This document shows positions 1 to 64,000 of a stretch of 64,000 nt of DNA, piece by piece. The notes under the pieces are model-generated. The model saw nothing but the letters and a program-made list of their open reading frames with translations, made no database searches and was not told the origin of the DNA. Position numbers and translations under genes: made by a program. Source of the DNA: Eukaryota sp. TZLM1-RC (lineage: Eukaryota > Protista > Metamonada: BaSk clade). The stretch spans positions 1,736,001 to 1,800,000 of the forward strand of contig JAUPSS010000001.1 in the NCBI GenBank assembly GCA_040285825.1. The letters are read 5' to 3'. Numbering within the stretch: position 1 is the first letter of the stretch; every line of letters starts with the position of its first letter.

Positions 1-989
1 GGAGTTTGATTTCCTTGAAATTTGCATATGCAAAATTGCAGAAAAAGATATTAAAAGTTTTTGAAAACTTGGATTTCACTGTTCGTCTTAGCTTGGCTTA
101 AGAAAAGAATCCCGTTTTTGCAAACTTTTTAATTGACCTCAAGGATAGTAGCTCAAGTTGTCTTATTTCCCAGATTCCAAATGTATATGGTCTATTATTA
201 AATGATCATCAATGGACAACTGCCTTCAGGATGAGGTGTTTCCTGTGGCCATGTAGTGTGCCAAATGATTTGATTTGTCGTTGTGGTCAGCTCATTAATC
301 TGAATCATTTATTTAATTGCAAATTTAATATTACATATCGCTCAGTTGTTCACGATGCTGTTAGAGACCAACTATACGCTATGTGCAAAAAGCCATCACA
401 TTGAAGCTTTTGTTGAACCACTTGTGCGAAGGTTGTCATCTGAAAATGAAAATGAAAATACTTTTTGGGAAACGCCGTGCTGATTTAATTACCCCTGCGT
501 CTGATGGTGTTATTAAAGTTGTTGATGTTGTCACTGTTGATGTTTGTAAAGACTCAGCAATTGACTTTGCTAAAAGAGATGAAACTCCACTTCGCTTTGC
601 TGAAAGAGCAAAATCAAAAAGTACAACGAACCCTTATCTCAGCTAGGACGTGTTGAGCATGTTAAGTATCAGTTGGTTCCATTTGCTGTTTCTCTTTTTG
701 GTAACATTGGAATATCTGGCATTAAATTTCTTGAAGGTTTCAGAAGTTTAATAAAAGAAAGAGCAGGAAAAGAATTGAACTTCAATTTCTGGCACAATAG
801 AATTGTTTTCGGTATTCTTAAAGCAATTCCAGAAATGTTGACCAAAGCACTGTTACAATTGGGAATAGAGTATGAAAATCGCGCGCTTAAAAGATTTGAT
901 GATGTTGATGCGTGTATTGAGGATATTGAGTTCTAGTTGTTTGTTTGATGTTTTGTTAGCGTTGAAAATAAATTTATTGGAAAAAAAAA
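1..989 (+). mobile_element. Family C RLE non-LTR retrotransposon, 3' part (runs off window start)
   Basis: Encodes CRC..HLFNC zinc motif, RSVVHD, RRAD..DV..K..KY RLE motifs; ends DACIEDIEF-TAG (936), AATAAA, poly(A) 981-989; in-frame TAA at 99-101; near-identical to 16730-17717. Confidence 0.93.
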
Positions 990-1120
990 GAAGATTTTCG
1001 GCAAAAGGATATCTTCTAGAGAATTCAAATACAAAATTTTTTCCACCACCAACAAATGCAGCTTTGGCCAAATATTTTGATGAATTGAATCCAACACCGC
1101 CAAGTTGAACATCAGAAAAA
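988..1120 (-). mobile_element. Family B internal fragment (FSDVQLGGVG..FSRRYPFAENL), cut by the family C copy
   Basis: Matches family B sequence at 42902-43035; begins at the recurrent truncation point TTTTCTGATGTTCAAC. Confidence 0.88.
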
Positions 1121-1265
1121 TGTTTTTTGTAAAATTTTAATTTATTTTCAAAACCACAGTCTAAAAGTCAATTTCTTCAAAACAAGCTTCCACACCATCA
1201 AACCTTACAGCAGCAATGTTTTCATAATGTGCACTGACAGACATTAAAGCTTTCGAAATCATTTT

Positions 1266-4200
1266 TTTTTTTTTAAAATTTAATTTTATTCTAAACCTAT
1301 AAATCAACATCTAAAAAATCCATCTCTCCCAAAACAAAAACACTAGATGCAACTCTCTCATAGTGAGATCCAAGAGAAAGCAAAGCATCAGAAACCATCT
1401 TCAACATCCCCTTAAAAATAGAAAACACAATTCTATTTTGCCAAAACAATCTGTTGAAATTTCTGCCAGTTCTTCTCTTTACAATCATTTCAAAATCATC
1501 CAAAAAACGTAAAGCAGTTGGTGCAAGTGAACCAAAAGGGAAAATACAAATGGATACAAATTGTATTTTGCATGCTGTAGACTGGCCAATTTGGACAAAG
1601 GTTCATTGTATTTTTGAATTTAAAATTTTCAGCATTTGAAAGGGGATTATGAATTTCAGAATTAACAAGCCTTTCATTTGAGGCATTACAAGGATCAACA
1701 GACATTACATCCAATAAAATGAAGCTTCCATCTAATCCAGGTAATATGACATCACCTCTATTATTCTTATGAAAATCATTTTCAGCATCAAACAGATTTG
1801 ACAACAAAGGTTCCAAGAAGGATTCAATTCTATGAGATTTACACATACAATATAACTGGTCTCTTACAGCATCATGAACCTTGCTTCTAAAAGTAATAAA
1901 ATGTTTACAATTTAACAAATGAGTAGTTGTAATTTCTCGAGAACATTTACAAATTAAATTATGAGGTAAATTATCAGGCCAGATAAAGGAACGAAATCTC
2001 ATATTCAGAGTCCAAGCAGAATCGGATAAGAGAGTACCATATACTTGTGGAATTGTTGTTACTAAGGCAGAAGAAGTACTGTCACACATATCTTGTAAAA
2101 GATTTGCAAAAGCGGGATTCTTTTTCTTGGCCAAGCCAAGTCTAACATCAAAATCCAAGCTTTCAAAAATCTTTGACAATTTTTGTTGAAGCTTTTTACA
2201 GCAAAACTGTAAATTAAATAGAGATCGGTTTGGAATTTCTTGAATTGATTGAGGAAAGCATTTGGTCCAAATTTGTGGCGGTAATTTTCAAGTTCACAAG
2301 ATAACTCATACAAATAGGGACTACAATTGGGGACTAACAGATGAGAATCATCAGGAAATCTACGAGAAAATTCATAAATAAAATTTTTGCCACCACCCAA
2401 GAATGCTGATTGACACAAAATTGAAGATTTAGTAAATCCAATACCCCCAAATTTGCTGAAGAAAATAAATGGCTTTTCAACATTCCTGGTTCTACATCCA
2501 ATAAATCAGCAAAAAATTCTGTTCTCAATGAATTAAAAGAACGACAAAAATCTAATGCTATGGAAGGAGCACAAGATCTCAAAATGTGGGTTATTCTCCC
2601 AGTGTAGCAAATTTTAAGCATAAAAAATTTAATATGCTTTTCTATATCTAAAGAAGAAATTGAATCAAGTTCAATTTTCATTTTTTCCAAAATAACTTGC
2701 AATTCATTCTGAATTTGAGGCACATTTCCTAACCAACAACCAAGGAACTTAAAAAGCATCACTACTATAATTAGTAAAAGGGACAATAGAATCGTTTATC
2801 ACGAGGTCTTGAGCAGAAGAGCCAATCAGAAGGCATTTGCTGGCATTAAGATGAAGCCCAATATTTTCATATGAATCGGCAATTTCTTGAGCAACCAATT
2901 CTAGTAAATCAAATGAACCAATCAAGGATATATCATCCATATAAGCAACTATTTTTATGGAAGGGTATTTTTGCTTAATGATATTTAAAGTTTTGTGAAT
3001 AGCTAAACAAAACAATAATGGACCTAAAGGATCACCTTGCTTCACACCAGAAGATGATTTAAGACCAAATGAATTAAAAATTAAATCTGATTCTTTACCA
3101 TAAAAATGGTAGAAAAAAACTCGATAGCTCAGGAAAATCAGATTTAATAACTTCAAAAATTGCTTCTCGCTTTACAGAATTAAAAGCATTTTTAAAGTCG
3201 AGATTAAAAATAAAATTATTTTCCTCTGCATTAAAAAAGGTATCAGAGGCAATAGCAGCAACAGAAGCACCATCAATTGTTTTTGATTCCAAATTGATGA
3301 GGATTTAAAAATGTAGAAGCTTTGTCTTTGACACGATCGAAGACAATTGATGCCAGCAAACGAGAAAGAGATTCACCAACAGCAATTGGGCGTATTCCAT
3401 CAGGTTTGATTCCGTTTCCAGGCTTTACTAAAGCAATCAGACGTGCTGCGAGCAATTCAAAAGGAGGATTTATTTTCAAAACAATTAATTGTTGGAAATA
3501 GTGGGCTAGATCATCAGCAATTTCGGGAGCACTGGAACACGCTATTTTTAAGAGATCAAAAGAAATTCCAGATGGGCCTGCTGCTTTCCCCTTAGGTAAT
3601 TTTTGAATAGCTTTAAGAACCTCAATTGCAGTAATAGGATTTTCAATCCAAAAAGGACACACTTCAGGCTTGCTGCACTTGAAATTTTCTTGAGGATGCA
3701 ACTTTTGGAGTTTTTCAAGGGTATCAGAGTTTACATCAGCCAAAGAAGAGGAAAACAAAGACTGCTTTGCGGCACCATAACGACCACGTAAGCACAATTT
3801 TCGGCAAATTTTTGATTTTACAATTTTTCTATTTCCAAATTTTTTCTTAAAACAATTTTTGTTTTTTCTAGCAAAATATTTCCAGAAGGATGAAATATTC
3901 CACTTATTATTTTTCAATTCAGAAGTAAAATTTCTCATTTCCATTGAGAAGGGGATTGTGCTGGCGGGACTTATTTCTACTGGGATCCGGATCGGGGGTC
4001 TTACGGTATCAACGGCTTTACAATTCGTACAAAACAGAAGTTTTCGACCATTTCGTGAATCTGCAACATCTTTTTTTGCAAAATGGACAACAAAAATTAC
4101 TGTTTTCAGAAGGGGAAGAAGAGGGAACACTAGAAGCATTTAACTGTTGATCGTCAGAAACATTATTTTCAGCACCATTCACAACGGCAACAGCTGGAAC

Positions 4201-4753
4201 AGAACATTTGAGAATTTGTTGAGCAGATTTTAATTCAAATTCTCTTTTTTGTTTCTCAGGGCACGTTCTCGAATTATGACCACTGATACCACAAATCGAA
4301 CATTTTTTAGAACCTTTTAATGGCACTGGTTTCGTTTTTTTCAGTTCTTTCAATTTTGTCAATTTTTGAGTTAAAAGTAGAAATAGACTTTTGACTTTTT
4401 GCAGTTTCAGCTGGAGAAAACAAATTTCGAGAAACGGAGTTGTTAATAGAACGCGCAACAGAACGCAAGGAACGTAATGGTGGTTTTTCTGTGTTTTTTC
4501 TGGTACAATGATCAGTTTTTGAATGAAAATTTTTTTGAGATGAATTTCGAGCATAGCTTGTATTGTGGGGAGAGTGGGGAAGTGGAGTGGATGAGCTTGA
4601 TCTGACTGGTAGAATCTTTGCTTGGGCGTTCCAATCAGTATCAGAGTCACTATCAGCCAAAGGCATCGTTTTGACAGAGAAACAGTACGACTTTGACGCT
4701 TTGACAGAAAGTGAAATATGAAAGGGTTGACTAAGGGAGGGAGAAAAAAAAAA
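1266..4753 (-). mobile_element. Family A full-length non-LTR retrotransposon (copy A1)
   Basis: 5' T10-CTCCCTCCCTTAG start, poly(A) tail, TSD TTTCGAAATCATTTT at 1251-1265 and 4759-4773. Confidence 0.96.
1297..4666 (-). CDS. Family A RT-RLE polyprotein (~1122 aa reconstructed; broken only by homopolymer indels)
   Basis: CSICGISGHNSRTC knuckle, GPSG, RPIAV, DFKNAF, QGDPLGPLLF, YMDD, KFLG, CKC..HLLNC, RSKVHD, RGD..LDV..E..K.KKY. Confidence 0.88.
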
Positions 4754-5784
4754 TCATTTTTCGAAATCATTTTAGCAATTGATTTGAAAATAGTAAAAAC
4801 AATACGATTTAGCCACAAGCGACGATCAAAACGCTTATTCATTCTTTTTTTCACAAGATTTTCAAAATCATCAATAAAATTCAAAGCAGTTTTTCCAAGA
4901 CGACCATACAACGATATAGCAAATGGGCAAATTTGGTAATCTACATGGCGAACATGTTTCAATTCTTTTAAAGGATTTGCATACTTTTTCCGTTTGTACA
5001 ATTCGGAGTCATCAAGGGGGGATACTTCGGATTGAGCATTTTTCAAGGCATTTTTCTTGCAAACATCCACTGTTACGACATCAACAACATTCATGACATC
5101 ATCAAACGAGGGCACAACAACATCAGCACGTCGTTTTCCATATTCTGAATCTCTTACGCTTTCATTTATATCAAGAGACCTCAACAAAGGTTCTACAAAA
5201 GATTCAATATGATAGGAATTACACATTGCATGGATTTGATCTCTGACTGCATCATGCAACGTAGAACGATAGGAAATATATCTATTACAATTAAATAAAT
5301 GTGATAATGTCAAACCAGCTCCACATTTACAAAACAAATCATTGGGCAAATTACAAGGCCATAAATAACAACGCATTCTCATAGCAGTGGTCCATTGGTC
5401 GTCATTCAAAAATAGACCATAAATCTGGGGAATTTGATTTATCAAAACTGCAGATGATCTGTCTTTCAAATCAATCAAAAAAATTGGCAAAAGCAGGATT
5501 TTTCTTTCATAGCCGTGCTAAGTCGAACAATAAAATCCTTGTTTTCAAAATTTTTCAAAAGATGTCGTTGGAGCTTTTTCAACGCAAATTTTAATGAATA
5601 TAAACTTCTGTCTGGAATTTCTTGAATGGAAATGGGGAAACATGATTGCCATAAGTCGGGAGATAAACTGGATATTTCTTCTCTTAAGTTATCCAGGAAT
5701 ATGCTATTTGTATTTTCAAGAAGATTTTCGGCAAAAGGATATCTTCTAGAGAATTCAAATACAAAATTTTTTCCACCACCAACA

Positions 5785-6025
5785 GTTGTTGCTGGTTCTA
5801 ACTATCGTATGTGTGATGAAAAGCTTGCTGTCGCCTTTAAAACGCTCTTGGAGAATCTCAGACGGCCGCTTAGTAATGTCAATCATGTACTTTTTGGTTT
5901 TGTGCTGGATGTTCAGTGTCTTTTTGGAGTATTAACTACTAGTAGTGGAGTAGTTGGATGAGGAATTTCTGAATTGTCGTAGTATTTAGCTCATTTAATA
6001 AAAAAAAGCCAATAATTAAAAAAAA
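5785..6025 (+). pseudogene. Insert F: retroposed poly(A)+ sequence unrelated to families A-E (processed mRNA 3' end, SINE, or 3' end of another element)
   Basis: ~240 bp, two A-tracts (AATAAAAAAAAAGCCAATAATT-A9), flanked by ACCAACA direct repeat (5778-5784, 6026-6032) inside family B. Confidence 0.8.
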
Positions 6026-7053
6026 ACCAACAAATGCAGCTTTGGCCAAATATTTTGATGAATTTTTTTAATTTAATTTTAATTTATTTTCAAAACCACA
6101 GTCTAAAAGTCAATTTCTTCAAAACAAGCTTCCACACCATCAAACCTTACAGCAGCAATGTTTTCATAATGTGCACTGACAGACATTAAAGCTTTCAAAA
6201 TCATTTTAGGAATTGATTTGAAAATAGTAAAAACAATACGATTTAGCCACAAGCGACGATCAAAACGCTTATTCATTCTTTTTTTCACAAGATTTTCAAA
6301 ATCATCAATAAAATTCAAAGCAGTTTTTCCAAGACGACCATACAACGATATAGCAAATGGGCAAATTTGGTAATCTACATGGCGAACATGTTTCAATTCT
6401 TTTAAAGGATTTGCATACTTTTTCCGTTTGTACAATTCGGAGTCATCAAGGGGGATACTTCGGATTGAGCATTTTTCAAGGCATTTTTCTTGCAAACATC
6501 CACTGTTACGACATCAACAACATTCATGACATCATCAAACGAGGGCACAACAACATCAGCACGTCGTTTTCCATATTCTGAATCTCTTACGCTTTCATTT
6601 ATATCAAGAGACCTCAACAAAGGTTCTACAAAAGATTCAATATGATAGGAATTACACATTGCATGGATTTGATCTCTGACTGCATCATGCAACGTAGAAC
6701 GATAGGAAATATATCTATTACAATTAAATAAATGTGATAATGTCAAACCAGCTCCACATTTACAAAACAAATCATTGGGCAAATTACAAGGCCATAAATA
6801 ACAACGCATTCTCATAGCAGTGGTCCATTGGTCGTCATTCAAAAATAGACCATAAATCTGGGGAATTTGATTTATCAAAACTGCAGATGATCTGTCTTTC
6901 AAATCAATCAAAAAATTGGCAAAAGCAGGATTTTCTTTCATAGCCGTGCTAAGTTTTTTTTTTTTTTTTTTTTTTTCTCCCTCCCTTAGTCAACCCTTTC
7001 ATATTTCACTTTCTGTCAAGGCGTCAAAGTCGTACTGTTTCTCTGTCAAAACG

Positions 7054-10000
7054 ATGCCTTTGGCTGATAGTGACTCTGATACTGATTGGAACGCCCAAGC
7101 AAAGATTCTACCAGTCAGATCAAGCTCATCCACTCCACTTCCCCACTCTCCCCACAATACAGGCTATGCTCGAAATTCATCTCAAAAAAATTCTCATTCA
7201 AAAACTGATCATTGTACCAGAAAAAACACAGAAAAACCACCATTACGTTCCTTGCGTTCTGTTGCGCGTTCTATTAACAACTCCGTTTCTCGAAATTTGT
7301 TTTCTCCAGCTGAAACTGCAAAAAGTCAAAAGTCTATTTCTACTTTTAACTCAAAAATTGACAAAATTGAAAGAACTGAAAAAATGAAACCACTGCCATT
7401 AAAAGGTTCTAAAAAATGTTCGATTTGTGGTATCAGTGGTCATAATTCGAGAACGTGCCCTGAGAAACAAAAAAGAGAATTTGAATTAAAATCTGCTCAA
7501 CAAATTCTCAAATGTTCTGTTCCAGCTGTTGCCGTTGTGAAAGGTGCTGAAAATAATGTTTCTGACGATCAACAGTTAAATGCTTCTAGTGTTCCCTCTT
7601 CTTCCCCTTCTGAAAACAGTAATTTTTGTTGTCCATTTTGCAAAAAAGATGTTGCAAATTCACGAAATGGTCGAAAACTTCTGTTTTGTACGAATTGTAA
7701 AGCCGTTGATACCGTAAGACCCCCGATCCGGATCCCAGTAGAAATAAGTCCCGCCAGCACAATCCCCTTCTCAATGGAAATGAGAAATTTTACTTCTGAA
7801 TTGAAAAATAATAAGTGGAATATTTCATCCTTCTGGAAATATTTTGCTAGAAAAAACAAAAATTGTTTTAAGAAAAAATTTGGAAATAGAAAAATTGTAA
7901 AATCAAAAATTTGCCGTAAATTGTGCTTACGTGGTCGTTATGGTGCCGCAAAGCAGTCTTTGTTTTCCTCTTCTTTGGCTGATGCAAACTCTGATACCCT
8001 TGAAAAACTTCAAAAGTTGCATCCTCAAGAAAATTTCAAGTGCAGCAAGCCTGAAGTGTGTCCATTTTGGATTGAAAATCCTATTACTGCAATTGAAGTT
8101 CTTAAAGCTATTCAAAAATTGCCAAAGGGGAAAGCAGCAGGCCCATCTGGAATTTCTTTTGATCTGTTAAAAATAGCGTGTTCCAGTGCTCCCGAAATTG
8201 CTGATGATCTAGCCCACTATTTTCAACAATTGATTGTTTTGAAAATTAATCCTCCATTTGAATTACTCGCAGCACGTCTGATTGCTTTAGTAAAGCCTGG
8301 AAACGGAATCAAACCTGATGGAATACGCCCAATTGCTGTTGGTGAATCTCTTTCTCGTTTGCTAGCATCAATTGTCTTCGATCGTGTCAAAGACAAAGCT
8401 TCTACATTTTTGAATCCTCATCAATTTGGAATCAAAACAATTGATGGTGCTTCTGTTGCTGCTATTGCCTCTGATACCTTTTTTAATGCAGAGGAAAATA
8501 ATTTTATTTTTAATCTCGACTTTAAAAATGCTTTTTAATTCTGTAAAGCGAGAAGTAATTTTTGAAGTTATTAAATCTGATTTTCCTGAGCTATCGAGTT
8601 TTTTCTACCATTTTTATGGGAAAGAATCAGATTTAATTTTTAATTCATTTGGTCTTAAATCATCTTCTGGAGTGAAGCAGGGAGATCCTTTAGGCCCATT
8701 ATTGTTTTGTTTAGCTATTCACAAAACTTTAAATATCATTAAGCAAAAATACCCTTCTATAAAAATAGTTGCTTATATGGATGATATATCCTTGATTGGT
8801 TCATTTGATTTACTAGAATTGGTTGCTCAAGAAATTGCCGATTCATATGAAAATATTGGGCTTCATCTTAATGCCAGCAAATGCCTTCTGATTGGCTCTT
8901 CTGCTCAAGACCTCGTGATAAACGATTCTATTGTCCCTTTTACTAATTATAGTAGTGATGCTTTTTAAGTTCCTTGGTTGTTGGTTAGGAAATGTGCCTC
9001 AAATTCAGAATGAATTGCAAGTTATTTTGGAAAAAATGAAAATTGAACTTGATTCAATTTCTTCTTTAGATATAGAAAAGCATATTAAATTTTTCATGCT
9101 TAAAATTTGCTACACTGGGAGAATAACCCACATTTTGAGATCTTGTGCTCCTTCCATAGCATTAGATTTTTGTCGTTCTTTTAATTCATTGAGAACAGAA
9201 TTTTTTGCTGATTTATTGGATGTAGAACCAGGAATGTTGAAAAGCCATTTATTTTCTTCAGCAAATTTGGGTGGTATTGGTTTTACTAAATCTTCAATTT
9301 TGTGTCAATCAGCATTCTTGGGTGGTGGCAAAAATTTTATTTATGAATTTTCTCGTAGATTTCCTGATGATTCTCATCTGTTAGTCCCCAATTGTAGTCC
9401 CTATTTGTATGAGTTATCTTGTGAACTTGAAAAATTACCGCCACAAATTTGGACCAAATGTTTTCCTCAATCAATTCAAGAAATTCCAAACCGATCTCTA
9501 TTTAATTTACAGTTTTGCTGTAAAAGCTTCAACAAAAATTGTCAAAGATTTTTGAAAGCTTGGATTTTGATGTTAGACTTGGCCTGGCCAAGAAAAAGAA
9601 TCCCGCTTTTGCAAATCTTTTTACAAGATATGTGTGACAGTACTTCTTCTGCCTTAGTAACAACAATTCCACAAGTTTATGGTACTCTCTTATCCGATTC
9701 TGCTTGGACTCTGAATATGAGATTTCGTTCCTTTATCTGGCCTGATAATTTACCTCATAATTTAATTTGTAAATGTTCTCGAGAAATTACAACTACTCAT
9801 TTGTTAAATTGTAAACATTTTATTACTTTTAGAAGCAAGGTTCATGATGCTGTAAGAGACCAGTTATATTGTATGTGTAAATCTCATAGAATTGAATCCT
9901 TCTTGGAACCTTTGTTGTCAAATCTGTTTGATGCTGAAAATGATTTTCATAAGAATAATAGAGGTGATGTCATATTACCTGGATTAGATGGAAGCTTCAT

Positions 10001-10424
10001 TTTATTGGATGTAATGTCTGTTGATCCTTGTAATGCCTCAAATGAAAGGCTTGTTAATTCTGAAATTCATAATCCCCTTTCAAATGCTGAAAATTTTAAA
10101 TTCAAAAAATACAATGAACCTTTGTCCAAATTGGCCAGTCTACAGCATGCAAAATACAATTTGTATCCATTTGTATTTTCCCTTTTTGGTTCACTTGCAC
10201 CAACTGCTTTACGTTTTTTGGATGATTTTGAAATGATTGTAAAGAGAAGAACTGGCAGAAATTTCAACAGATTGTTTTGGCAAAATAGAATTGTGTTCTC
10301 TATTTTTAAGGGGATGTTGAAGATGGTTTCTGATGCTTTGCTTTCTCTTGGATCTCACTATGAGAGAGTTGCATCTAGTGTTTTTGTTTTGGGAGAGATG
10401 GATTTTTTAGATGTTGATTTATAG
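7054..10424 (+). CDS. Family A RT-RLE polyprotein (~1122 aa)
   Basis: ATG 7054 (MPLADSDSD) to TAG 10424 (MDFLDVDL); ORF-track pieces 6916-8538, 8426-8968, 8931-10424 join at homopolymer runs; full RT and RLE motif set. Confidence 0.92.
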
Positions 10425-10458
10425 GTTTAGAATAAAATTAAATTTTAAAAAAAAAAAA
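10425..10458 (+). promoter_or_regulatory. Minimal family A 3' UTR with AATAAA polyadenylation signal and poly(A) tail
   Basis: TAG-GTTTAG-AATAAA-ATTAAATTTT-An; all five families have AATAAA shortly before the tail. Confidence 0.75.
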
Positions 10459-10790
10459 AGCCGTGCTAAGTCGAACAATAAAATCCTTATTTTCAAAATT
10501 TTTCAAAAGATGTCGTTGGAGCTTTTTCAACGCAAATTTTAATGAATATAAACTTCTGTCTGGAATTTCTTGAATGGAAATGGGGAAACATGATTGCCAT
10601 AAGTCGGGAGATAAACTGGATATTTCTTCTCTTAAGTTATCCAGGAATATGCTATTTGTATTTTCAAGAAGATTTTCGGCAAAGGATATCTTCTAGAGAA
10701 TTCAAATACAAAATTTTTTCCACCACCAACAAATGCAGCTTTGGCCAAATATTTTGATGAATTTTTTTTAATTTAATTTTAATTTATTTT

Positions 10791-12500
10791 AAGAGCTTTA
10801 AGTCCCGGAGTCAAAGCACCGAACAATGAAAATACAGTAGATAAACTGAAAATACTTCATCCTTATGAAGACCCTATTATGGATCAAAATTTTTACGGCA
10901 CATACTGGGAAAATTATCCATTGATGCCATCAGAAGTTTTTTCGGTTATCAAAAAGAGACCTCGTGGTAAGTCTGCCGGACTTTCTGGTATTACTATTGA
11001 TCATGTAAAAGCCGCGATTATTTCTTCAGAAGATTGCCTTGGTTTATTTTTTTTTTTAAAATTAATTTTATTCTAAACCTATAAATCAACATCTAAAAAA
11101 TCCATCTCTCCCAAAACAAAAACACTAGATGCAACTCTCTCATAGTGAGATCCAAGAGAAAGCAAAGCATCAGAAACCATCTTCAACATCCCCTTAAAAA
11201 TAGAAAACACAATTCTATTTTGCCAAAACAATCTGTTGAAATTTCTGCCAGTTCTTCTCTTTACAATCATTTCAAAATCATCCAAAAAACGTAAAGCAGT
11301 TGGTGCAAGTGAACCAAAAAGGGAAAATACAAATGGATACAAATTGTATTTTGCATGCTGTAGACTGGCCAATTTGGACAAAGGTTCATTGTATTTTTTG
11401 AATTTAAAATTTTCAGCATTTGAAAGGGGATTATGAATTTCAGAATTAACAAGCCTTTCATTTGAGGCATTACAAGGATCAACAGACATTACATCCAATA
11501 AAATAAAGCTTCCATCTAATCCAGGTAATATGACATCACCTCTATTATTCTTGTGAAAATCATTTTCAGCATCAAACAGATTTGACAACAGAGGTTCCAA
11601 GAAGGATTCAATTCTATGAGATTTACACATACAAACATACAATATTTCATACCTTGGTTTATTGACCAAATTTTTCAACCAAATATTATCTGGTCAACGC
11701 AAGTACCAGAAGAATTAAGAAGTTCTCGTTTGACTGCACTTGTCAAAAATTCAAAAATGGATGTTCGTCCTATTGCAGTCTCTGAGAGCTTACATAATAT
11801 TTTTTCTGCGTGTTGCTTAAGCAGGTTCAATGAAAAAGCTAAAAAGATTTTATTACCCTTTCAATATGGTATAAATACTACAGATGGAGTCTCTTCAGCG
11901 ATTTTTGCTACTGATGTCTTATTTCGTCAAAATGAATCCAATGTTTGCATGTCATTGGATTTTAGTAATGCTTTCAATTCGCTAAGTCGTCGCAGTATCC
12001 ATGGTGCTCTATTGCAATATATGCCAGAATTAATACCATATTTTCAATCAACATATTGCACATATTCTAATTTACATTTTGGTAACAACATTTTGATTTC
12101 ATCAAGTGGCGTAAAGCAAGGAGATCCGTTAGGACCTCTTTTGTTTTGTTTGGCCATTCATCCTATTCTACTGCAAATTCAAGAGATGTTTCCTTCACTA
12201 AAAATGATTGCATATATGGATGATGTTGTGCTTATTGGTGAATTAAATATTGTGAAAAAAGCAACTGTATGTTTTAAAGAATTATTTACCAAAATTGGTC
12301 TCCGACTTAATTTACTTAAATGTGTTTTGTTATCGAATTCTCCAGTTTCCACAATAATTGATGATATTGAAATTCAAGCCAAATTATATTCAATTGATGC
12401 TATTCGTCATTTGGGTTCGTTTTTAGGAAATAATGATGAAATTACCAAAAATTGTTTGAAAAGTTGAACTCAATTTCTGACAAAATTGACCGAATGATGA
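10791..12500 (+). mobile_element. Family D fragment (RT domain), duplicate of 23993-25704, split by truncated A
   Basis: GKSAGLSG, RPIAVSE, DFSNAF, QGDPLGPLLF, YMDD, HLG; preceded by orphan family B tail 10764-10790. Confidence 0.92.
11049..11651 (-). mobile_element. Family A 5'-truncated copy (~0.59 kb) in D
   Basis: Poly(A), RLE coding, TSD CCTTGGTTTATT 11037-11048 / 11652-11663. Confidence 0.93.
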
Positions 12501-17717: not shown

Positions 17718-17994
17718 GAAGATTTTCGGCAAAAGGATATCTTCTAGAGAATTCAAATACAAAATTTTTTCCACCACCAACAAATGCAGCTTTGGCCAAA
17801 TATTTTGATGAATTGAATCCAACACCGCCAAGTTGAACATCAGAAAAATGTTTTTTGTAAAATTTTAATTTATTTTCAAAACCACAGTCTAAAAAGTCAA
17901 TTTCTTCAAAACAAGCTTCCACACCATCAAACCTTACAGCAGCAATGTTTTCATAATGTGCACTGACAGACATTAAAGCTTTCGAAATCATTTT

Positions 17995-54453: not shown

Positions 54454-57400
54454 TTTTTTCTGATGTTCAACTTGGCGGTGTTGGATTCAATTCATCAAAA
54501 TATTTGGCCAAAGCTGCATTTGTTGGTGGTGGAAAAAATTTTGTATTTGAATTCTCTAGAAGATATCCTTTTGCCGAAAATCTTCTTGAAAATACAAATA
54601 GCATATTCCTGGATAACTTAAGAGAAGAAATATCCAGTTTATCTCCCGACTTATGGCAATCATGTTTCCCCATTTCCATTCAAGAAATTCCAGACAGAAG
54701 TTTATATTCATTAAAATTTGCGTTGAAAAAGCTCCAACGACATCTTTTGAAAAATTTTGAAAACAAGGATTTTATTGTTCGACTTAGCACGGCTATGAAA
54801 GAAAATCCTGCTTTTGCCAATTTTTTGATTGATTTGAAGGACAGTTCATCTGCAGTTTTGATAAATCAAATTCCCCAGATTTATGGTCTATTTTTGAATG
54901 ACGACCAATGGACCACTGCTATGAGAATGCGTTGTTATTTATGGCCTTGTAATTTGCCCAATGATTTGTTTTGTAAATGTGGAGCTGGTTTGACATTATC
55001 ACATTTATTTAATTGTAATAGATATATTTCCTATCGTTCTACGTTGCATGATGCAGTCAGAGATCAAATCCATGCAATGTGTAATTCCTATCATATTGAA
55101 TCTTTTGTAGAACCTTTGTTGAGGTCTCTTGATATAAATGAAAGTGTAAGAGATTCAGAATATGGAAAACGACGTGCTGATGTTGTTGTGCCCTCGTTTG
55201 ATGATGTCATGAATGTTGTTGATGTCGTAACAGTGGATGTTTGCAAGAAAAATGCCTTGAAAAATGCTCAATCCGAAGTATCCCCCTTGATGACTCCGAA
55301 TTGTACAAACGGAAAAAGTATGCAAATCCTTTAAAAGAATTGAAACATGTTCGCCATGTAGATTACCAAATTTGCCCATTTGCTATATCGTTGTATGGTC
55401 GTCTTGGAAAAACTGCTTTGAATTTTATTGATGATTTTGAAAATCTTGTGAAAAAAAGAATGAATAAGCGTTTTGATCGTCGCTTGTGGCTAAATCGTAT
55501 TGTTTTTACTATTTTCAAATCAATTCCTAAAATGATTTCGAAAGCTTTAATGTCTGTCAGTGCACATTATGAAAACATTGCTGCTGTAAGGTTTGATGGT
55601 GTGGAAGCTTGTTTTGAAGATATTGACTTTTAGACTGTGGTTTTGAAAATAAATTAAAAGTATGTTAAAAAAATTCTGAAATTCATAATCCCCTTTCAAA
55701 TGCTGAAAATTTTAAATTCAAAAATACAATGAACCTTTGTCCAAATTGGCCAGTCTACAGCATGCAAAATACAATTTGTATCCATTTGTATTTTCCCTTT
55801 TGGTTCACTTGCACCAACTGCTTTACGTTTTTTGGATGATTTTGAAATGATTGTAAAGAGAAGAACTGGCAGAAATTTCAACAGATTGTTTTGGCAAAAT
55901 AGAATTGTGTTTTCTATTTTTAAGGGGATGTTGAAGATGGTTTCTGATGCATTGCTTTCTCTTGGATCTCACTATGAGAGAGTTGCATCTAGTGTTTTTG
56001 TTTTGGGAGAGATGGATTTTTAGATATTGATTTATAGGTTTAGAATAAAATTAAATTTTAAAAAAAATCCTTTAAAAGAATTGAAACATGTTCGCCGTGT
56101 AGATTACCAAATTTGCCCATTTGCTATATCGTTGTATGGTCGTCTTGGAAAAACTGCTTTGAATTTTATTGATGATTTTGAAAATCTTGTGAAAAAAAGA
56201 ATGAGTAAGCGTTTTGATCGTCGCTTGTGGCTAAATCGTATTGTTTTTACTATTTTCAAATCAATTCCTAAAATGATTTCGAAAGCTTTAATGTCTGTCA
56301 GTGCACATTATGAAAACATTGCTGCTGTAAGGTTTGATGGTGTGGAAGCTTGTTTTGAAGATATTGACTTTTAGACTGTGGTTTTGTAAATAAATTAAAA
56401 TTTTACAAAAAACATTTTTTCTGATGTTCAACTTGGCGGTGTTGGATTCAATTCATCAAAATTTTTTGATTGATTTGAAGGACAGTTCATCTGCAGTTTT
56501 GATAAATCAAATTCCCCAGATTTATGGTCTATTTTTGAATGACGACCAATGGACCACTGCTATGAGAATGCGTTGTTATTTATGGCCTTGTAATTTGCCC
56601 AATGATTTGTTTTGTAAATGTGGAGCTGGTTTGACATTATCACATTTATTTAATTGTAATAGATATATTTCCTATCGTTCTACGTTGCATGATGCAGTCA
56701 GAGATCAAATCCATGCAATGTGTAATTCCTATCATATTGAATCTTTTGTAGAACCTTTGTTGAGGTCTCTTGATATAAATGAAAGTGTAAGAGATTCAGA
56801 ATATGGAAAACGACGTGCTGATGTTGTTGTGCCCTCGTTTGATGATGTCATGAATGTTGTTGATGTCGTAACAGTGGATGTTTGCAAGAAAAATGCCTTG
56901 AAAAATGCTCAATCCGAAGTATCCCCCTTGATGACTCCGAATTGTACAAACGGAAAAAGTATGCAAATCCTTTAAAAGAATTGAAACATGTTCGCCATGT
57001 AGATTACCAAATTTGCCCATTTGCTATATCGTTGTATGGTCGTCTTGGAAAAACTGCTTTGAATTTTATTGATGATTTTGAAAATCTTGTGAAAAAAAGA
57101 ATGAATAAGCGTTTTGATCGTCGCTTGTGGCTAAATCGTATTGTTTTTACTATTTTCAAATCAATTCCTAAAATGATTTCGAAAGCTTTAATGTCTGTCA
57201 GTGCACATTATGAAAACATTGCTGCTGTAAGGTTTGATGGTGTGGAAGCTTGTTTTGAAGATATTGACTTTTAGACTGTGGTTTTGAAAATAAATTAAAA
57301 GTATGTTAAAAAAAATTCTGAAATTCATAATCCCCTTTCAAATGCTGAAAATTTTAAATTCAAAAAATACAATGAACCTTTGTCCAAATTGGCCAGTCTA

Positions 57401-60222
57401 CAGCATGCAAAATACAATTTGTATCCATTTGTATTTTCCCTTTTTGGTTCACTTGCACCAACTGCTTTACGTTTTTTGGATGATTTTGAAATGATTGTAA
57501 AGAGAAGAACTGGCAGAAATTTCAACAGATTGTTTTGGCAAAATAGAATTGTGTTTTCTATTTTTAAGGGGATGTTGAAGATGGTTTCTGATGCATTGCT
57601 TTCTCTTGGATCTCACTATGAGAGAGTTGCATCTAGTGTTTTTGTTTTGGGAGAGATGGATTTTTTAGATATTGATTTATAGGTTTAGAATAAAATTAAA
57701 TTTTAAAAAAAATCCTTTAAAAGAATTGAAACATGTTCGCCGTGTAGATTACCAAATTTGCCCATTTGCTATATCGTTGTATGGTCGTCTTGGAAAAACT
57801 GCTTTGAATTTTATTGATGATTTTGAAAATCTTGTGAAAAAAAGAATGAGTAAGCGTTTTGATCGTCGCTTGTGGCTAAATCGTATTGTTTTTACTATTT
57901 TCAAATCAATTCCTAAAATGATTTCGAAAGCTTTAATGTCTGTCAGTGCACATTATGAAAACATTGCTGCTGTAAGGTTTGATGGTGTGGAAGCTTGTTT
58001 TGAAGATATTGACTTTTAGACTGTGGTTTTGTAAATAAATTAAAATTTTACAAAAAACATTTTTTCTGATGTTCAACTTGGCGGTGTTGGATTCAATTCA
58101 TCAAAATATTTGGCCAAAGCTGCATTTGTTGGTGGTGGAAAAAATTCTGTATTTGAATTCTCTAGAAGATATCCTTTTGCCGAAAATCTTCTTGAAAATA
58201 CAAATAGCATATTCCTGGATAACTTAAGAGAAGAAATATCCAGTTTATCTCCCGACTTATGGCAATCATGTTTCCCCATTTCCATTCAAGAAATTCCAGA
58301 CAGAAGTTTATATTCATTAAAATTTGCGTTGAAAAAGCTCCAACGACATCTTTTGAAAAATTTTGAAAACAAGGATTTTATTGTTCGACTTAGCACGGCT
58401 ATGAAAGAAAATCCTGCTTTTGCCAATTTTTTGATTGATTTGAAAGACAGATCATCTGCAGTTTTGATAAATCAAATTCCCCAGATTTATGGTCTATTTT
58501 TGAATGACGGCCAATGGACCACTGCTATGAGAATGCGTTGTTATTTATGGCCTTGTAATTTGCCCAATGATTTGTTTTGTAAATGTGGAGCTGGTTTGAC
58601 ATTATCACATTTATTTAATTGTAATAGATATATTTCCTATCGTTCTACGTTGCATGATGCAGTCAGAGATCAAATCCATGCAATGTGTAATTCCTATCAT
58701 ATTGAATCTTTTGTAGAACCTTTGTTGAGGTCTCTTGATATAAATGAAAGTGTAAGAGATTCAGAATATGGAAAACGACGTGCTGATGTTGTTGTGCCCT
58801 CGTTTGATGATGTCATGAATGTTGTTGATGTCGTAACAGTGGATGTTTGCAAGAAAAATGCCTTGAAAAATGCTCAATCCGAAGTATCCCCCCTTGATGA
58901 CTCCGAATTGTACAAACGGAAAAAGTATGCAAATCCTTTAAAAGAATTGAAACATGTTCGCCATGAGGCTTGGATTATGAAGTAAGACTTGGCTTGGCCA
59001 AAACTAAAAATCCCGCTTTCGGTAATTTTTTAAAGGATATTCGTGATAGTTCTGCTGCTGCTTTAGTAACTCAAGTTCCCTCTGTTTATGGACTTTTGTT
59101 AAAAGACAATGAATGGCTTCTAAACATGCGTTTTCGTTGTTTTTTGTGGCCAAACAATTTGCCCAATCATTTAACTTGTAAATGTGGTAAACCTCTTTTG
59201 TTTACTCATCTTTTGAACTGTAAACATTTCATTACGTTTAGAAGCAAAGTGCATAATAACGTCAGGGACCAAATTTATGTAATGTGCAAATCATATCGTG
59301 TAGATTCCTTTTTAGAACCGCTGTTATCAAAATTAATTCTTGATGATCCCAATATTGATAGTACGCGTTACAACAGAGCTTCTATGGGTCTGACTAGAGG
59401 TGATCTAGTTGTTCCTGGTTTAAATGGTAGTTTTACTATTTTGGACGCCATGTCTATTGACCCTTGTAATTCCTCTAACGAACATTTCATTAACTCGGAT
59501 GTAAATAATCCTCTTCTTGCAGGCGAAAAATATAAAATTGCTAAATATGCGAAACCCATTTCCTCGGTTAATGAAAATTCTCATGCCCAATATAATTTAT
59601 GTCCATTTGTTTTTTCTTTGCTTGGATCTCTAGGTAAGGCTGCTATGGCTTTCCTTGAGGATTTTGTTGTAGTTGTAAAGGAAAGAACTGGAAGAATTTT
59701 CAATCGTGTTTACTGGCAAAACAGGATTGTATTTTCTAATTGTAACACTAATTTCTGATTCACTATCTTCTTTTGGGAAATTTTCTGAATCTTTAGCGAT
59801 TAATTGTTTTGATGTAGGGGAGGCAGGTTTTGAGGATGTGGAGTTTTAATTGTGTATTTCATATTTGTTGTTGAATAAAAATAAACAATTATTTTTTTTG
59901 TTCGCCATGTAGATTACCAAATTTGCCCATTTGCTATATCGTTGTATGGTCGTCTTGGAAAAACTGCTTTGAATTGTATTGATGATTTTGAAAATCTTGT
60001 GAAAAAAAGAATGAATAAGCGTTTTGATCGTCGCTTGTGGCTAAATCGTATTGTTTTTACTATTTTCAAATCAATTCCTAAAATGATTTCGAAAGCTTTA
60101 ATGTCTGTCAGTGCACATTATGAAAACATTGCTGCTGTAAGGTTTGATGGTGTGGAAGCTTGTTTTGAAGAAATTGACTTTTAGACTGTGGTTTTGAAAA
60201 TAAATTAAAATTAAATTAAAAA
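54454..60222 (+). repeat. Head-to-tail higher-order repeat of element 3' ends: unit = B(1.2 kb)+A(0.39 kb)+B(0.35 kb); two full units plus a third B
   Basis: Unit starts (CTGATGTTCAAC) at 54460, 56421, 58066; identical internal junctions; unit 2 has a ~320 bp deletion at 56461. Confidence 0.92.
58966..59898 (+). mobile_element. Family E 5'-truncated copy (~0.93 kb) in B
   Basis: CKC..HLLNC, RSKVHN, RGD..LDAMS..EKYKIAKY; closest to A; TSD TGTTCGCCATG 58955-58965 / 59899-59909. Confidence 0.92.
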
Positions 60223-61790
60223 TAAATGTGATAATGTCAAACCAGCTCCACATTTACAAAACAAATCATTGGGCAAATTACAAGGCCATAAATATCAACG
60301 CATTCTCATAGCAGTGGTCCATTGGTCGTCATTCAAAAATAGACCATAAATCTGGGGAATTTGATTTATCAAAACTGCAGATGAACTGTCCTTCAAATCA
60401 ATCAAAAAATTGGCAAAAGCAGGATTTTCTTTCTTAGCCGTGCTAAGTCGAACAAAAATTAATTTATTGAATTTGCACACTTGATTAAATTAAATCATAA
60501 CTAATGGGACGACTATCATTAAACCAAGATTTCCTCTACAAAATCTTGATTTGCTTGCTGTCTAGCTAAAGCTTCTCTAATTCGATTGAAAAACCGCGGT
60601 AATCTATTAATAATGGCAAATTGAATCCGTGAACGCCATAAAAAAATATCAAATCTTTTCATTGTTTTTTCTTTCACCATTTTTTGGAAGTCATCCAAAA
60701 AAGTTTCTGCTTCAACTGATAATCTTCCATTTATCGAAAATGGAAAAGCAATAAAAACCAGCTGTGTATTTCTATCGATATTTGCATCTTCAATTTCTTT
60801 ATCATATTTTCTATGTTTTTCTTTTGCTTTAAAATCCAGAGCAGCCACAGGATTAAGTTTTCTTCTGTGAACCAAAGTATCGTTTGCAACATTACATGAG
60901 ACAAAGTCAACAATAGCTTCAGAATTATCAATCCAATCACAGTATACATCACCTCTATCATCAGAACCAAAATTATTCAGAGAAAGTGTTTCTTTCAGCA
61001 GGGGCTCTTTGATACACGATATCCTTGCAGTTTGTGCCATATTGAAAACAGTGTCTCTAACAGCATCATGTAATGAAGAACGATAAGTTATCAATTTAGA
61101 GCAATTTAGAGCATGGCAATAAGTCGAACAATAAAATCCTTGTTTTCAAAATTTTTCAAAAGAAATCTCGTTGGAGCTTTTTCAACGCAAATTTTAATGA
61201 ATATAAACTTCTATCTGGAATTTCATGAATGGATATGGGGAAACATGATTGCCATAAGTCGGGAGATAAACTGGATATTTCTTCTCTTAAGTTATCCAGG
61301 AATATGCTATTTGTATTTTCAAGAAGATTTTCGGCAAAAGGATATCTTCTAGAGAATTCAAATACAAAATTTTTTCCACCACCAATAAATGCAGCTTTGG
61401 TCAAATATTTTGATGAATTGAATCCAACACCGCCAAGTTGAACATCAGAAAAAATATGATTTTTCAAAATTGATGGATCAACAGACATTAAATAAGCCAA
61501 AAATTGGGTACGTATTTTGTTAAATTGTCTACAAAAATTGTAAGTTAGGGATGGAGGTAATGATCGCAGTAAATGAGTAATTTTTCCAGCATAACAAATT
61601 TTCAAAAGAAAAAACTTAAGATGTTTTTCCAATTCAAGAGTCTTTATGACTTCTAGCTCTTTTTTAATTGAATTTAAATAATTTTCAAGGCTGTCAAGTG
61701 TCTTTTCGGCGGAACCTAAATAGCAACCCAGAAAGCAGAAACTAGTTGAAGTATAATCAATATATGGAACTTCGAGGGAATTAATTATTA
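60220..61790 (-). mobile_element. Family B internal fragment split by D
   Basis: Matches the full-length B copy; rejoined across TAAGTCGAACAA. Confidence 0.9.
60456..61119 (-). mobile_element. Family D 5'-truncated copy (~0.66 kb) in B
   Basis: 191 aa RLE ORF 60519-61094; TSD TAAGTCGAACAA 60444-60455 / 61120-61131. Confidence 0.93.
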
Positions 61791-61796
61791 AATCAG

Positions 61797-64000
61797 AAAA
61801 CTGATCATTGTACCAGAAAAAACACAGAAAAACCACCATTACGTTCCTTGCGTTCTGTTGCGCGTTCTATTAACAACTCCGTTTCTCGAAATTTGTTTTC
61901 TCCAGCTGAAACTGCAAAAAGTCAAAAGTCTATTTCCACTTTTAACTCAAAAATTGACAAAATTGAAAGAACTGAAAAAATGAAACCACTGCCATTAAAA
62001 GGTTCTAAAAAATGTTCGATTTGTGGTATCAGTGGTCATAATTCGAGAACGTGCCCTGAGAAACAAAAAAGAGAATTTGAATTAAAATCTGCTCAACAAA
62101 TTCTCAAATGTTCTGTTCCAGCTGTTGCCGTTGTGAAAGGTGCTGAAAATAATGTTTCTGACGATCAACAGTTAAATGCTTCTAGTGTTCCCTCTTCTTC
62201 CCCTTCTGAAAACAGTAATTTTTGTTGTCCATTTTGCAAAAAAAGATGTTGCAAATTCACGAAATGGTCGAAAACTTCTGTTTTGTACGAATTGTAAAGC
62301 CGTTGATACCGTAAGACCCCCGATCCGGATCCCAGTAGAAATAAGTCCCGCCAGCACAATCCCCTTCTCAATGGAAATGAGAAATTTTACTTCTGAATTG
62401 AAAAATAATAAGTGGAATATTTCATCCTTCTGGAAATATTTTGCTAGAAAAAACAAAAATTGTTTTAAGAAAAAATTTGGAAATAGAAAAATTGTAAAAT
62501 CAAAAATTTGCCGTAAATTGTGCTTACGTGGTCGTTATGGTGCCGCAAAGCAGTCTTTGTTTTCCTCTTCTTTGGCTGATGCAAACTCTGATACCCTTGA
62601 AAAACTTCAAAAGTTGCATCCCCAAGAAAATTTCAAGTGCAGCAAGCCTGAAGTGTGTCCATTTTGGATTGAAAATCCTATTACTGCAATTGAAGTTCTT
62701 AAAGCTATTCAAAAATTGCCAAAGGGGAAAGCAGCAGGCCCATCTGGAATTTCTTTTGATCTGTTAAAAATAGCGTGTTCCAGTGCTCCCGAAATTGCTG
62801 ATGATCTAGCCCACTATTTTCAACAATTGATTGTTTTGAAAATTAATCCTCCATTTGAATTACTCGCAGCACGTCTGATTGCTTTAGTAAAGCCTGGAAA
62901 CGGAATCAAACCTGATGGAATACGCCCAATTGCTGTTGGTGAATCTCTTTCTCGTTTGCTAGCATCAATTGTCTTCGATCGTGTCAAAGACAAAGCTTCT
63001 ACATTTTTGAATCCTCATCAATTTGGAATCAAAACAATTGATGGTGCTTCTGTTGCTGCTATTGCCTCTGATACCTTTTTTAATGCAGAGGAAAATAATT
63101 TTATTTTTAATCTCGACTTTAAAAATGCTTTTAATTCTGTAAAGCGAGAAGTAATTTTTGAAGTTATTAAATCTGATTTTCCTGAGCTATCGAGTTTTTT
63201 CTACCATTTTTATGGGAAAGAATCAGATTTAATTTTTAATTCATTTGGTCTTAAATCATCTTCTGGAGTGAAGCAGGGAGATCCTTTAGGCCCATTATTG
63301 TTTTGTTTAGCTATTCACAAAACTTTAAATATCATTAAGCAAAAATACCCTTCTATAAAAATAGTTGCTTATATGGATGATATATCCTTGATTGGTTCAT
63401 TTGATTTACTAGAATTGGTTGCTCAAGAAATTGCCGATTCATATGAAAATATTGGGCTTCATCTTAATGCCAGCAAATGCCTTCTGATTGGCTCTTCTGC
63501 TCAAGACCTCGTGATAAACGATTCTATTGTCCCTTTTACTAATTATAGTAGTGATGCTTTTAAGTTCCTTGGTTGTTGGTTAGGAAATGTGCCTCAAATT
63601 CAGAATGAATTGCAAGTTATTTTGGAAAAAATGAAAATTGAACTTGATTCAATTTCTTCTTTAGATATAGAAAAGCATATTAAATTTTTCATGCTTAAAA
63701 TTTGCTACACTGGGAGAATAACCCACATTTTGAGATCTTGTGCTCCTTCCATAGCATTAGATTTTTGTCGTTCTTTTAATTCATTGAGAACAGAATTTTT
63801 TGCTGATTTATTGGATGTAGAACCAGGAATGTTGAAAAGCCATTTATTTTCTTCCAGCAAATTTGGGTGGTATTGGTTTTACTAAATCTTCAATTTTGTG
63901 TCAATCAGCATTCTTGGGTGGTGGCAAAAATTTTATTTATGAATTTTCTCGTAGATTTCCTGATGATTCTCATCTGTTAGTCCCCAATTGTAGTCCCTAT
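61797..64000 (+). mobile_element. Family A copy lacking ~220 nt at 5' end, runs off window end
   Basis: 569 aa ORF 62176-63885 with complete RT motifs; SNP pattern like A2. Confidence 0.94.

What the first reader, a model, noticed from the sequence alone, without database searches (positions are those of the whole stretch)
1..64000. A chromosomal domain built entirely from five co-active RLE (CRE-like) LINE families inserting into each other: candidate retrotransposon centromere or subtelomere
Seen: apart from two copies of a 240 bp insert and short fillers, every base I traced belongs to families A-E. Copies within a family are near-identical, both orientations occur, and all 19 independent TSD-flanked insertions I could resolve lie inside another element (A in A, B, D, E; B in A; D in B; E in A, B). 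Known: RLE elements are classically sequence-specific (R2 in 28S rDNA, CRE/SLACS/CZAR in spliced-leader genes, MoTeR/Cnl1 at telomere repeats), while nested centromeric clusters are known from other element types (Zepp-like L1-clade elements in green algae, DIRS-1 in Dictyostelium, G2/Jockey-3 in Drosophila). Inference: these families target a chromatin region rather than a sequence and build or maintain a centromere-like or heterochromatic domain.
Basis: partly seen in the sequence, partly recalled or inferred. Interest (0 to 1): 0.9.

Follow-up and report, generated by a model that had tools for sequence, protein, structure and literature searches.

The report
Ordinary nest of endonuclease-type LINE retrotransposons
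This 64 kb of the protist Skoliomonas litria really is made only of five young families of jumping genes inserted into one another, but the same contig holds a second domain just like it and the same families also sit beside ordinary genes, so it looks like a transposon pile-up rather than a demonstrated centromere, and it is not a chromosome end.

Summary
99.3% of the window belongs to five LINE families (A 60%, B 26%, C, D/E, F) plus two copies of a 243-bp retrocopy. I resolved 17 independent insertions with target-site duplications (TSDs, mode 13 bp), all inside other elements, nested up to five deep. The elements carry an R2-type restriction-like endonuclease (RLE); this rests on conserved motifs and on a fold search whose top seven PDB hits are all R2. 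"CRE-like" could not be tested.

The centromere or subtelomere reading is not supported:
- The window is JAUPSS010000001.1:1,736,001-1,800,000, in the middle of a 4.04-Mb contig, with no telomere or satellite repeats.
- Its nest is at most about 219 kb, bounded by host genes at 1.620 and 1.839 Mb.
- A second gene-free nest lies at 3.447-3.568 Mb on the same contig, and two more lie on the 6.9-Mb contig.
- The same families also occur singly among host genes.
- The published genome is 55% repetitive.

About 19% of the window comes from a very recent segmental and tandem duplication rather than from separate insertions. The short-read contigs could not test the assembly.

The scan found this before on other DNA: follow-ups s1-643768 and s1-637310 reached the same verdict.

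The parts
1..64000 (.). Gene-free nest of five RLE-LINE families; equals JAUPSS010000001.1:1,736,001-1,800,000 of Skoliomonas litria TZLM1-RC
   Evidence: composition; placement in the contig
39186..42675 (+). Full-length family A element (3.49 kb), with 5' oligo(T), 3' poly(A) and TSD AAAAGCAGGATT, inserted in B. The other full-length A copies are 1264-4752(-), 6968-10457(+), 17992-21465(-), 33037-36521(-) and 49676-53159(+)
41514..42632 (+). Coding region of the C-terminal CCHC plus PD-(D/E)xK restriction-like endonuclease domain of this A copy
   Evidence: invariant C-C-H-C, H, E, R-D, D, K-Y; fold search: top seven PDB hits are all R2 proteins
38317..45138 (-). Full-length family B element (3.33 kb once the nested A is removed), TSD ACAAAGGTTCATT, inserted in a 5'-truncated A(+)
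28513..47577 (-). Five-level nest: A(-)1125-3484 contains A(-)59-3483 (30291-45955), which contains A(+)2213-3484 (37373-45487), which contains B(-) full-length, which contains A(+) full-length. Side insertions of F, A, B and A are also present
1..14086 (.). Copy 1 of a segmental duplication; copy 2 is 16730-27287. Differences: 1 substitution in 6.95 kb and 10 in 3.6 kb. Copy 1 also carries a later A insertion at 6968-10457. The right boundary lies inside an A element, which suggests unequal recombination between A copies
54819..58111 (+). Tandem duplication of a 1.64-kb composite unit made of B and A 3' fragments; 1 substitution between the units
14965..15062 (+). 98-bp daughter of A: the last ~73 nt of A, a poly(A), and 20 nt identical to the B flank downstream of the A copy at 6968-10457 (3' transduction). 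TSD AAAAACTCGATAG
5783..6025 (+). 243-bp polyadenylated retrocopy of unknown RNA, TSD ACCAACA, inserted in B. The second copy at 22496-22738 arose by the segmental duplication
23966..28512 (+). Family D/E element split by two A(-) insertions: 24249-24835 (TSD AATAAACCAAGG) and 25706-27287 (TSD AATGATGA)
16035..17715 (+). Family C element, 5'-truncated, with poly(A)
58966..59898 (+). Family F element, 5'-truncated, TSD TGTTCGCCATG, inserted in B(+)

Best explanation
The window is the core of a transposon island of at most about 219 kb in the repeat-rich (55%) genome of Skoliomonas litria. Five related, recently active non-LTR retrotransposon families built it. Each encodes one long protein with a zinc knuckle, a reverse transcriptase and a C-terminal R2-type restriction-like endonuclease. 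Shown here: the elements insert by target-primed reverse transcription, as indicated by poly(A) tails, frequent 5' truncation and staggered cuts that leave TSDs of about 13 bp. They share no target sequence. The families overlapped in activity, because they are nested in each other reciprocally. At least one copy inside the nest was transcribed and re-inserted 4.5 kb away. Recombination between copies added segmental and tandem duplications. Inferred: insertions pile up here mainly because DNA already made of dead elements tolerates them, while insertions in the gene-dense remainder are removed by selection. Some preference for such chromatin may add to this. Nothing marks this island as a centromere: comparable islands recur on the same contig and on others.
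For: Organism and position. Element hallmarks and 17 TSD-flanked events (7-18 bp, mode 13). RLE domain: invariant motif residues in a 16-sequence alignment; AlphaFold model with pLDDT 80 whose top seven PDB hits are all R2 proteins, E 5e-8 to 7e-5; no APE domain in Pfam. Youth: A copies 98.6-100% identical by substitutions, with nearly all indels being +/-1 in homopolymers, the usual pattern of Nanopore consensus errors. 3' transduction. Duplications. Nest limits: host genes (GAPDH, WD40) at or below 1,619,884 and host genes (Alba, ICAT) from about 1,838,600; 1.700-1.723 Mb is 95% repeats. Other nests: contig 1 at 3.447-3.469 and 3.5465-3.568 Mb, 99% repeats; contig 4 at 3.00-3.02 and 5.674-5.696 Mb. 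Dispersed copies among host genes. Genome 31.9 Mb, 16 contigs, 55.4% repetitive: PMC11316075. Non-specific RLE elements are already known in the HERO clade: PMC4640811.
Against: I sampled only 11 places outside the window, about 22 kb each, all chosen through RLE-LINE gene models, so island number and size genome-wide are not measured. In that small sample the copies in gene-rich DNA tend to be older (90-96% identity) than those in nests (98-100%), which would also fit active targeting of nests. The long-range order of the assembly in this repeat-only region could not be checked with reads. No chromatin or kinetochore data exist. One of the islands on this contig could still be the centromere.
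Confidence: 0.72

Rival explanations
1. The nest of about 200 kb at 1.62-1.84 Mb is the regional centromere of this chromosome, built and renewed by RLE LINEs that home to centromeric chromatin.
For: It is a large gene-free domain at 40-45% of a 4.04-Mb contig. Its elements are very young and it shows local duplication and composite tandem arrays.
Against: A second domain on the same contig, sampled at 3.447-3.469 and 3.5465-3.568 Mb, has no unique stretch of 300 bp or more and no host-gene Pfam hit. Two nests lie on contig 4. The families are not confined to nests. The window has no satellite with a period up to 500 bp. With 55% of the genome repetitive, most repeat DNA must lie outside any set of one domain per chromosome.
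Confidence: 0.12
2. The families actively target TE-rich or heterochromatic DNA in general, for example by tethering to a chromatin mark, which creates many landing zones unrelated to centromeres.
For: There is no target consensus beyond a weak pyrimidine/A step at the first nick. The youngest copies in my small sample are mostly in nests or mini-nests. A daughter copy re-inserted 4.5 kb from its source. Three insertions fall within 41 bp of B.
Against: A TSD-flanked full-length A copy lies in DNA that is unique within my sample. Fragments of A, C, D/E and F lie between host genes. Finding every insertion inside a TE is inevitable in TE-only DNA. My rough, uncomputed estimate puts the three-in-41-bp cluster at p about 0.1 once the excess of B 3' ends is allowed for.
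Confidence: 0.2
3. The domain is subtelomeric.
For: RLE elements of relatives (Giardia GilM and GilT) are telomere-associated, according to the literature listed.
Against: The window is 1.74 Mb from one contig end and 2.24 Mb from the other. It has no TTAGGG arrays. Host genes flank the nest on both sides.
Confidence: 0.02
4. The arrangement is an assembly artefact of a Nanopore assembly in repeat-only DNA.
For: The segmental and tandem duplications differ by only 1 substitution in 6.95 kb and 1 in 1.65 kb. Homopolymer indels show that polishing was imperfect here. Short-read contigs break at every junction.
Against: Every junction I examined has the poly(A), 5' end and matching TSD expected of a real insertion. 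One duplicate carries an extra TSD-flanked insertion. The published Nanopore coverage is 41x.
Confidence: 0.05

Closest known systems
HERO-clade RLE non-LTR retrotransposons (Kojima & Jurka 2015, PMC4640811)
   Same: One protein with RT followed by a CCHC and PD-(D/E)xK endonuclease; many members insert without sequence specificity.
   Different: Membership was not tested, because no named reference sequences could be retrieved. In a quick FastTree without bootstrap, the Skoliomonas families form their own strongly supported group apart from every relative retrieved.
R2 elements (solved structures 9dou, 8gh6, 8ibw, 9nl3)
   Same: The C-terminal endonuclease domain has the same fold and catalytic motifs. 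The RT domain is recognisably related.
   Different: R2 inserts at one site in 28S rDNA and has N-terminal zinc-finger and Myb DNA-binding domains. Here the targets are diverse and the N-terminus has only a weak zinc-knuckle match.
CRE/SLACS/CZAR elements of trypanosomatids
   Same: RLE-type architecture.
   Different: Those elements insert in spliced-leader genes. These do not: there are no RNA-gene targets in the window and the TSDs are diverse.
Giardia GilM/GilT
   Same: RLE-type LINEs in the metamonad lineage closest to Skoliomonas (literature listed).
   Different: They form head-to-tail arrays at telomeres. The elements here are internal, occur in both orientations and are nested.
Retrotransposon-built centromeres (Zepp-like in green algae, DIRS-1 in Dictyostelium, G2/Jockey-3 in Drosophila; general knowledge)
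   Same: Gene-free clusters of nested, young elements.
   Different: Those are one cluster per chromosome with centromeric-histone evidence. Here several clusters share a contig and no such evidence exists.
Nested retrotransposon islands between genes (for example maize intergenic LTR nests; general knowledge)
   Same: Layered insertions into older elements that can be ordered through their TSDs; passive accumulation in tolerated DNA.
   Different: These are LINEs with an RLE endonuclease rather than LTR elements, in a 32-Mb protist genome.

Membership tests
Non-LTR (LINE) retrotransposon inserting by target-primed reverse transcription | 3' poly(A), frequent 5' truncation, variable TSDs, no terminal repeats | tested here: met
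RLE-bearing (early-branching) non-LTR retrotransposons | CCHC motif and PD-(D/E)xK endonuclease C-terminal to the RT | tested here: met
   Invariant C43, C45, H53, C57, H68, E89, K153 and near-invariant R107, D109, D123, Y157 in alignment A2. The fold search returns only R2 proteins as its top seven hits.
RLE-bearing (early-branching) non-LTR retrotransposons | No N-terminal apurinic/apyrimidinic-type endonuclease | tested here: met
   Pfam finds only RVT_1 and a weak zinc knuckle.
RLE-bearing (early-branching) non-LTR retrotransposons | Single long ORF | tested here: inconclusive
   All six full-length A copies in the window have split frames, but the breaks are +/-1 homopolymer indels typical of Nanopore consensus errors. 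An A copy in L007 aligns to the 1099-aa model P0004 in a single tblastn HSP.
CRE clade | RT groups with CRE1, CRE2, SLACS and CZAR in a phylogeny | not testable with these tools
   No named reference sequences were returned by three homology searches and the atlas.
CRE clade | Site-specific insertion in spliced-leader genes | tested here: not met
   17 different TSD sequences, all inside other elements; no Rfam or tRNA hit in the window.
HERO clade | RT groups with HERO references | not testable with these tools
   Same limitation. Only the behaviour (non-specific insertion) matches.
Retrotransposon-built regional centromere | One such domain per chromosome | tested here: not met
   At least two on contig 1 (1.62-1.84 Mb and 3.447-3.568 Mb) and at least two on contig 4. 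Caveat: the contigs are not proven to be single chromosomes.
Retrotransposon-built regional centromere | Centromeric histone or kinetochore occupancy | not testable with these tools
   No ChIP, CUT&Tag or Hi-C data are available. The genome paper does not mention centromeres.
Retrotransposon-built regional centromere | Element families enriched in or confined to the domain | tested here: not met
   A, C, D/E and F copies lie among host genes in L003, L007, L010 and L011.
Subtelomeric retrotransposon array | Adjacent to a chromosome end or telomere repeats | tested here: not met
   Position 1.736-1.800 Mb of 4.04 Mb; no TTAGGG repeats.

The most novel reading that the evidence does not exclude
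The gene-free nest of about 200 kb at 1.62-1.84 Mb is this chromosome's regional centromere, built by non-specific RLE LINEs that home to centromeric chromatin. The second nest on the contig would then be a neocentromere-like or pericentric island, or the sign of a false join. I know of no described centromere made of RLE-type LINEs, and none for the barthelonid/Skoliomonas branch of metamonads.
Probability: 0.1. Interest if true: 0.7.

Novelty: new member of a known kind. Interest (0 to 1): 0.3.

Why it matters
The five families are undescribed members of the endonuclease-type (RLE) LINEs, from a protist lineage whose genome paper reports only "55% repetitive". They add a clear case of RLE elements that insert without a fixed target, outside the HERO clade's known hosts. 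They also show how such elements, together with recombination between copies, build gene-free islands in a 32-Mb genome. For the scan, the practical point is that these nests recur many times in this genome, so one of them should not be scored as a centromere candidate on sequence alone.

Tried and rejected
1. Read check of the assembly. Only short-read contigs of 2023 runs were available. They end at every junction and continue into the uninterrupted family sequence, so they neither confirm nor refute the junctions.

2. Clade naming. Three homology searches, a PDB sequence search (R2 and LINE-1 score alike on the RT alone) and the protein atlas returned no named CRE, NeSL, R4 or HERO reference. 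The FastTree (SH-like support, no bootstrap, midpoint root, several long branches) shows only that the Skoliomonas families form their own group. An IQ-TREE run did not finish in time.

3. Insertion hotspot in B (three events within 41 bp). I judged it not significant once the excess of B 3' ends is considered. This is a rough estimate, not a computed test.

4. RNA-gene targets. There are no Rfam families and no tRNAs in the window.

5. Satellite or telomere repeats: none.

Full report
**Where the window is.** A homology search with the longest family A reading frame returned almost only proteins of "Eukaryota sp. TZLM1-RC", which is Skoliomonas litria. One gene model, P0041 (P9112_013673), maps at 100% identity to window 46453-48360 on the minus strand. 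It lies at 1,782,450-1,784,360 of JAUPSS010000001.1, a contig of 4,041,680 bp. The fetched locus matches the window exactly, so the window is 1,736,001-1,800,000 of that contig in the same orientation. The genome paper reports 31.9 Mb in 16 contigs, 55.4% repetitive, assembled from 41x Nanopore reads and polished with Illumina. It does not mention centromeres and reports no telomeres for this strain (PMC11316075).

**Checking the observation.**
- 94% of the window is repeated within the window.
- Using one representative copy per family, 63,115 of 64,000 bases tile at 90% identity or better.
- Family shares are A 59.7%, B 25.6%, C 4.7%, D/E 6.9%, F 1.7% and the 243-bp insert 0.8%.
- My provisional families D and E are two halves of one element split by an A insertion with TSD AATGATGA.
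- There are six full-length A copies of 3.49 kb. Each starts with an oligo(T) of variable length, ends in poly(A) and is flanked by a TSD.
- I resolved 17 independent TSD-flanked insertions, counting events copied by the segmental duplication once. TSDs are 7-18 bp, and 7 of the 16 tabulated are 13 bp.
- Nesting is reciprocal (A in B and B in A; A in F and F in A), so the families overlapped in activity.
- The deepest stack has five levels, at 28513-47577.
- The TSD sequences share no motif beyond a weak pyrimidine-then-A step at the presumed first nick.

**What else shaped the region.**
- Window 1-6954 plus 10459-14086 duplicates 16730-27287, with 1 substitution in 6.95 kb and 10 in 3.6 kb. 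The first copy gained a further A element afterwards. The right boundary lies inside an A element, which points to unequal recombination between A copies.
- A 1.64-kb composite of B and A 3' ends is tandemly duplicated at 54819-58111.
- A 98-bp insertion at 14965-15062 is the last ~73 nt of A, a poly(A) and 20 nt identical to the flank of the A copy at 6968-10457. This is a 3' transduction, and it shows that a nest copy was transcribed and re-inserted nearby.
- Nearly all indels between A copies are +/-1 in A or T runs, the usual pattern of Nanopore consensus errors. The broken reading frames in the window are therefore weak evidence that the copies are dead. By substitutions alone the copies are 98.6-100% identical.

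**What the elements are.**
- The A protein has a weak N-terminal zinc knuckle, a central RVT_1 domain and no AP-type endonuclease.
- Downstream of the RT lies C-x-C-x7-H-x3-C, then R..H-D, R-x-D...D and E..K..K-Y. In an alignment with 15 relatives from Skoliomonas, insects, a tardigrade and metagenomes, these residues are invariant or nearly so.
- An AlphaFold model of this domain (pLDDT 80) finds R2 retrotransposon proteins as its seven best PDB matches (E 5e-8 to 7e-5), followed by viral PD-(D/E)xK cap-snatching nucleases.
- The RLE assignment is therefore tested and met. "CRE-like" is not: no named references could be retrieved.
- A quick FastTree places all Skoliomonas families, including three from strain RCL, on one strongly supported branch apart from every other relative found. 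This suggests a radiation within the genus. The tree has no bootstrap and no named outgroups.
- Kojima and Jurka state that four of the five RLE clades are mostly target-specific, while HERO holds many non-specific elements (PMC4640811). Non-specific RLE LINEs are therefore already known.

**Is it a centromere or a subtelomere?**
- It is not subtelomeric. It lies 1.74 Mb and 2.24 Mb from the contig ends, has no TTAGGG arrays, and host genes flank the nest on both sides.
- The nest is bounded by GAPDH and a WD40 gene at or below 1,619,884 and by Alba and ICAT genes from about 1,838,600. That makes it at most about 219 kb. The sampled stretch 1.700-1.723 Mb is 95% repeats, but 1.639-1.700 Mb was not sampled.
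- On the same contig, 3,447,063-3,469,027 and 3,546,504-3,568,250 are 99% repeats, with no host-gene Pfam hit. Unchecked first-reader notes describe 3.472-3.598 Mb as element-only too.
- On the 6.9-Mb contig, 3.00-3.02 Mb and 5.674-5.696 Mb are nests as well.
- The same families also occur outside nests. L003 holds a 6-kb mini-nest between a SAPS/phosphatase pair and other genes. L007 holds a full-length A with a TSD in DNA unique within my sample. L010 and L011 hold F, C, A and D/E fragments between kinase, DCP2, RICTOR, glutamate dehydrogenase and TGT genes.
It is not excluded either, because one of the islands could be the centromere and no chromatin data exist.
- The window has no satellite with a period up to 500 bp.

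**Most likely mechanism.** Shown: non-specific target-primed reverse transcription with cuts about 13 bp apart, several families active at overlapping times, and recombination between copies. Inferred: islands grow because insertions into dead elements cost nothing, while those in the gene-dense remainder are purged. An added preference for such chromatin is possible, because in my small sample the gene-proximal copies tend to be older. I could not separate the two.

**Limits.**
- All eleven places outside the window were chosen through RLE-LINE gene models and are only about 22 kb each.
- The read tool offered only short-read contigs, which collapse at every junction, so the long-range assembly is unverified. 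The TSD logic does argue that the individual junctions are real.
- The earlier follow-ups s1-643768 and s1-637310 reached the same verdict on other pieces of this genome. I re-tested their two key claims, several nests per contig and the same families beside genes, on my own loci.

Noticed in passing
window 39186-39194, 6968-6989, 36506-36521, 49676-49684; L007:11866-11873: Every full-length A and B copy starts with an oligo(T) of very different length (about 8 to 22 T), sometimes after 1-5 extra bases, directly before a conserved CTCCCTCCC start. Homopolymer lengths are unreliable in this assembly, but 9 versus 22 is a real difference. The origin is unexplained; it could be untemplated addition or a slipping start.
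   Followed up: partly
window 39186-39447 vs 44876-45137: Families A and B share a gap-free 5' module of about 262 nt at 85% identity, while the adjacent coding regions are only about 45% identical at the protein level. This suggests exchange of 5' ends between families.
   Followed up: partly
window 48739-49676: A mosaic copy: 49021-49676 is 99% identical to family B, but the adjoining 282 bp (48739-49020) encodes RT sequence only about 73% identical to any family in the sample. It is either a recombinant or a sixth lineage that shares B's downstream part.
   Followed up: partly
window 54438-60226; L009:15371-20332: Composite tandem arrays built from 3' fragments of A and B recur: a 1.64-kb unit about 2.5 times in the window, and a different unit of about 1.1 kb three times in L009. 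These look like incipient satellites made of LINE ends.
   Followed up: partly
window 5783-6025 and 22496-22738: A 243-bp polyadenylated retrocopy with a 7-bp TSD and no Rfam match. It is presumably a cellular or SINE-like RNA mobilised in trans by the LINE machinery. Its source gene was not identified.
   Followed up: partly
window 42678-42730, 6930-6967, 60444-60458 (B positions about 2421-2461): Three independent insertions (two of A, one of D/E) fall within 41 bp of family B. By my rough estimate this is suggestive but not significant.
   Followed up: partly
window-wide; alignment of six A copies: Almost all indels between near-identical copies are +/-1 in A or T runs of 4-7, so gene models in the repeat-only parts of this assembly are probably broken by consensus errors rather than by decay.
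   Followed up: yes
L007:1126-5351 (JAUPSS010000004.1, about 0.973-0.977 Mb): A Ty3-type LTR retroelement (RT, RNase H, integrase) lies beside the full-length A copy. The repeat content of this genome is therefore not only RLE LINEs.
   Followed up: no
run X2: A run filed under a different organism label in the same study holds 66% of the sampled words of window 36400-39400, and one of its contigs joins the A pieces differently. It may be a related strain sharing these families.
   Followed up: no
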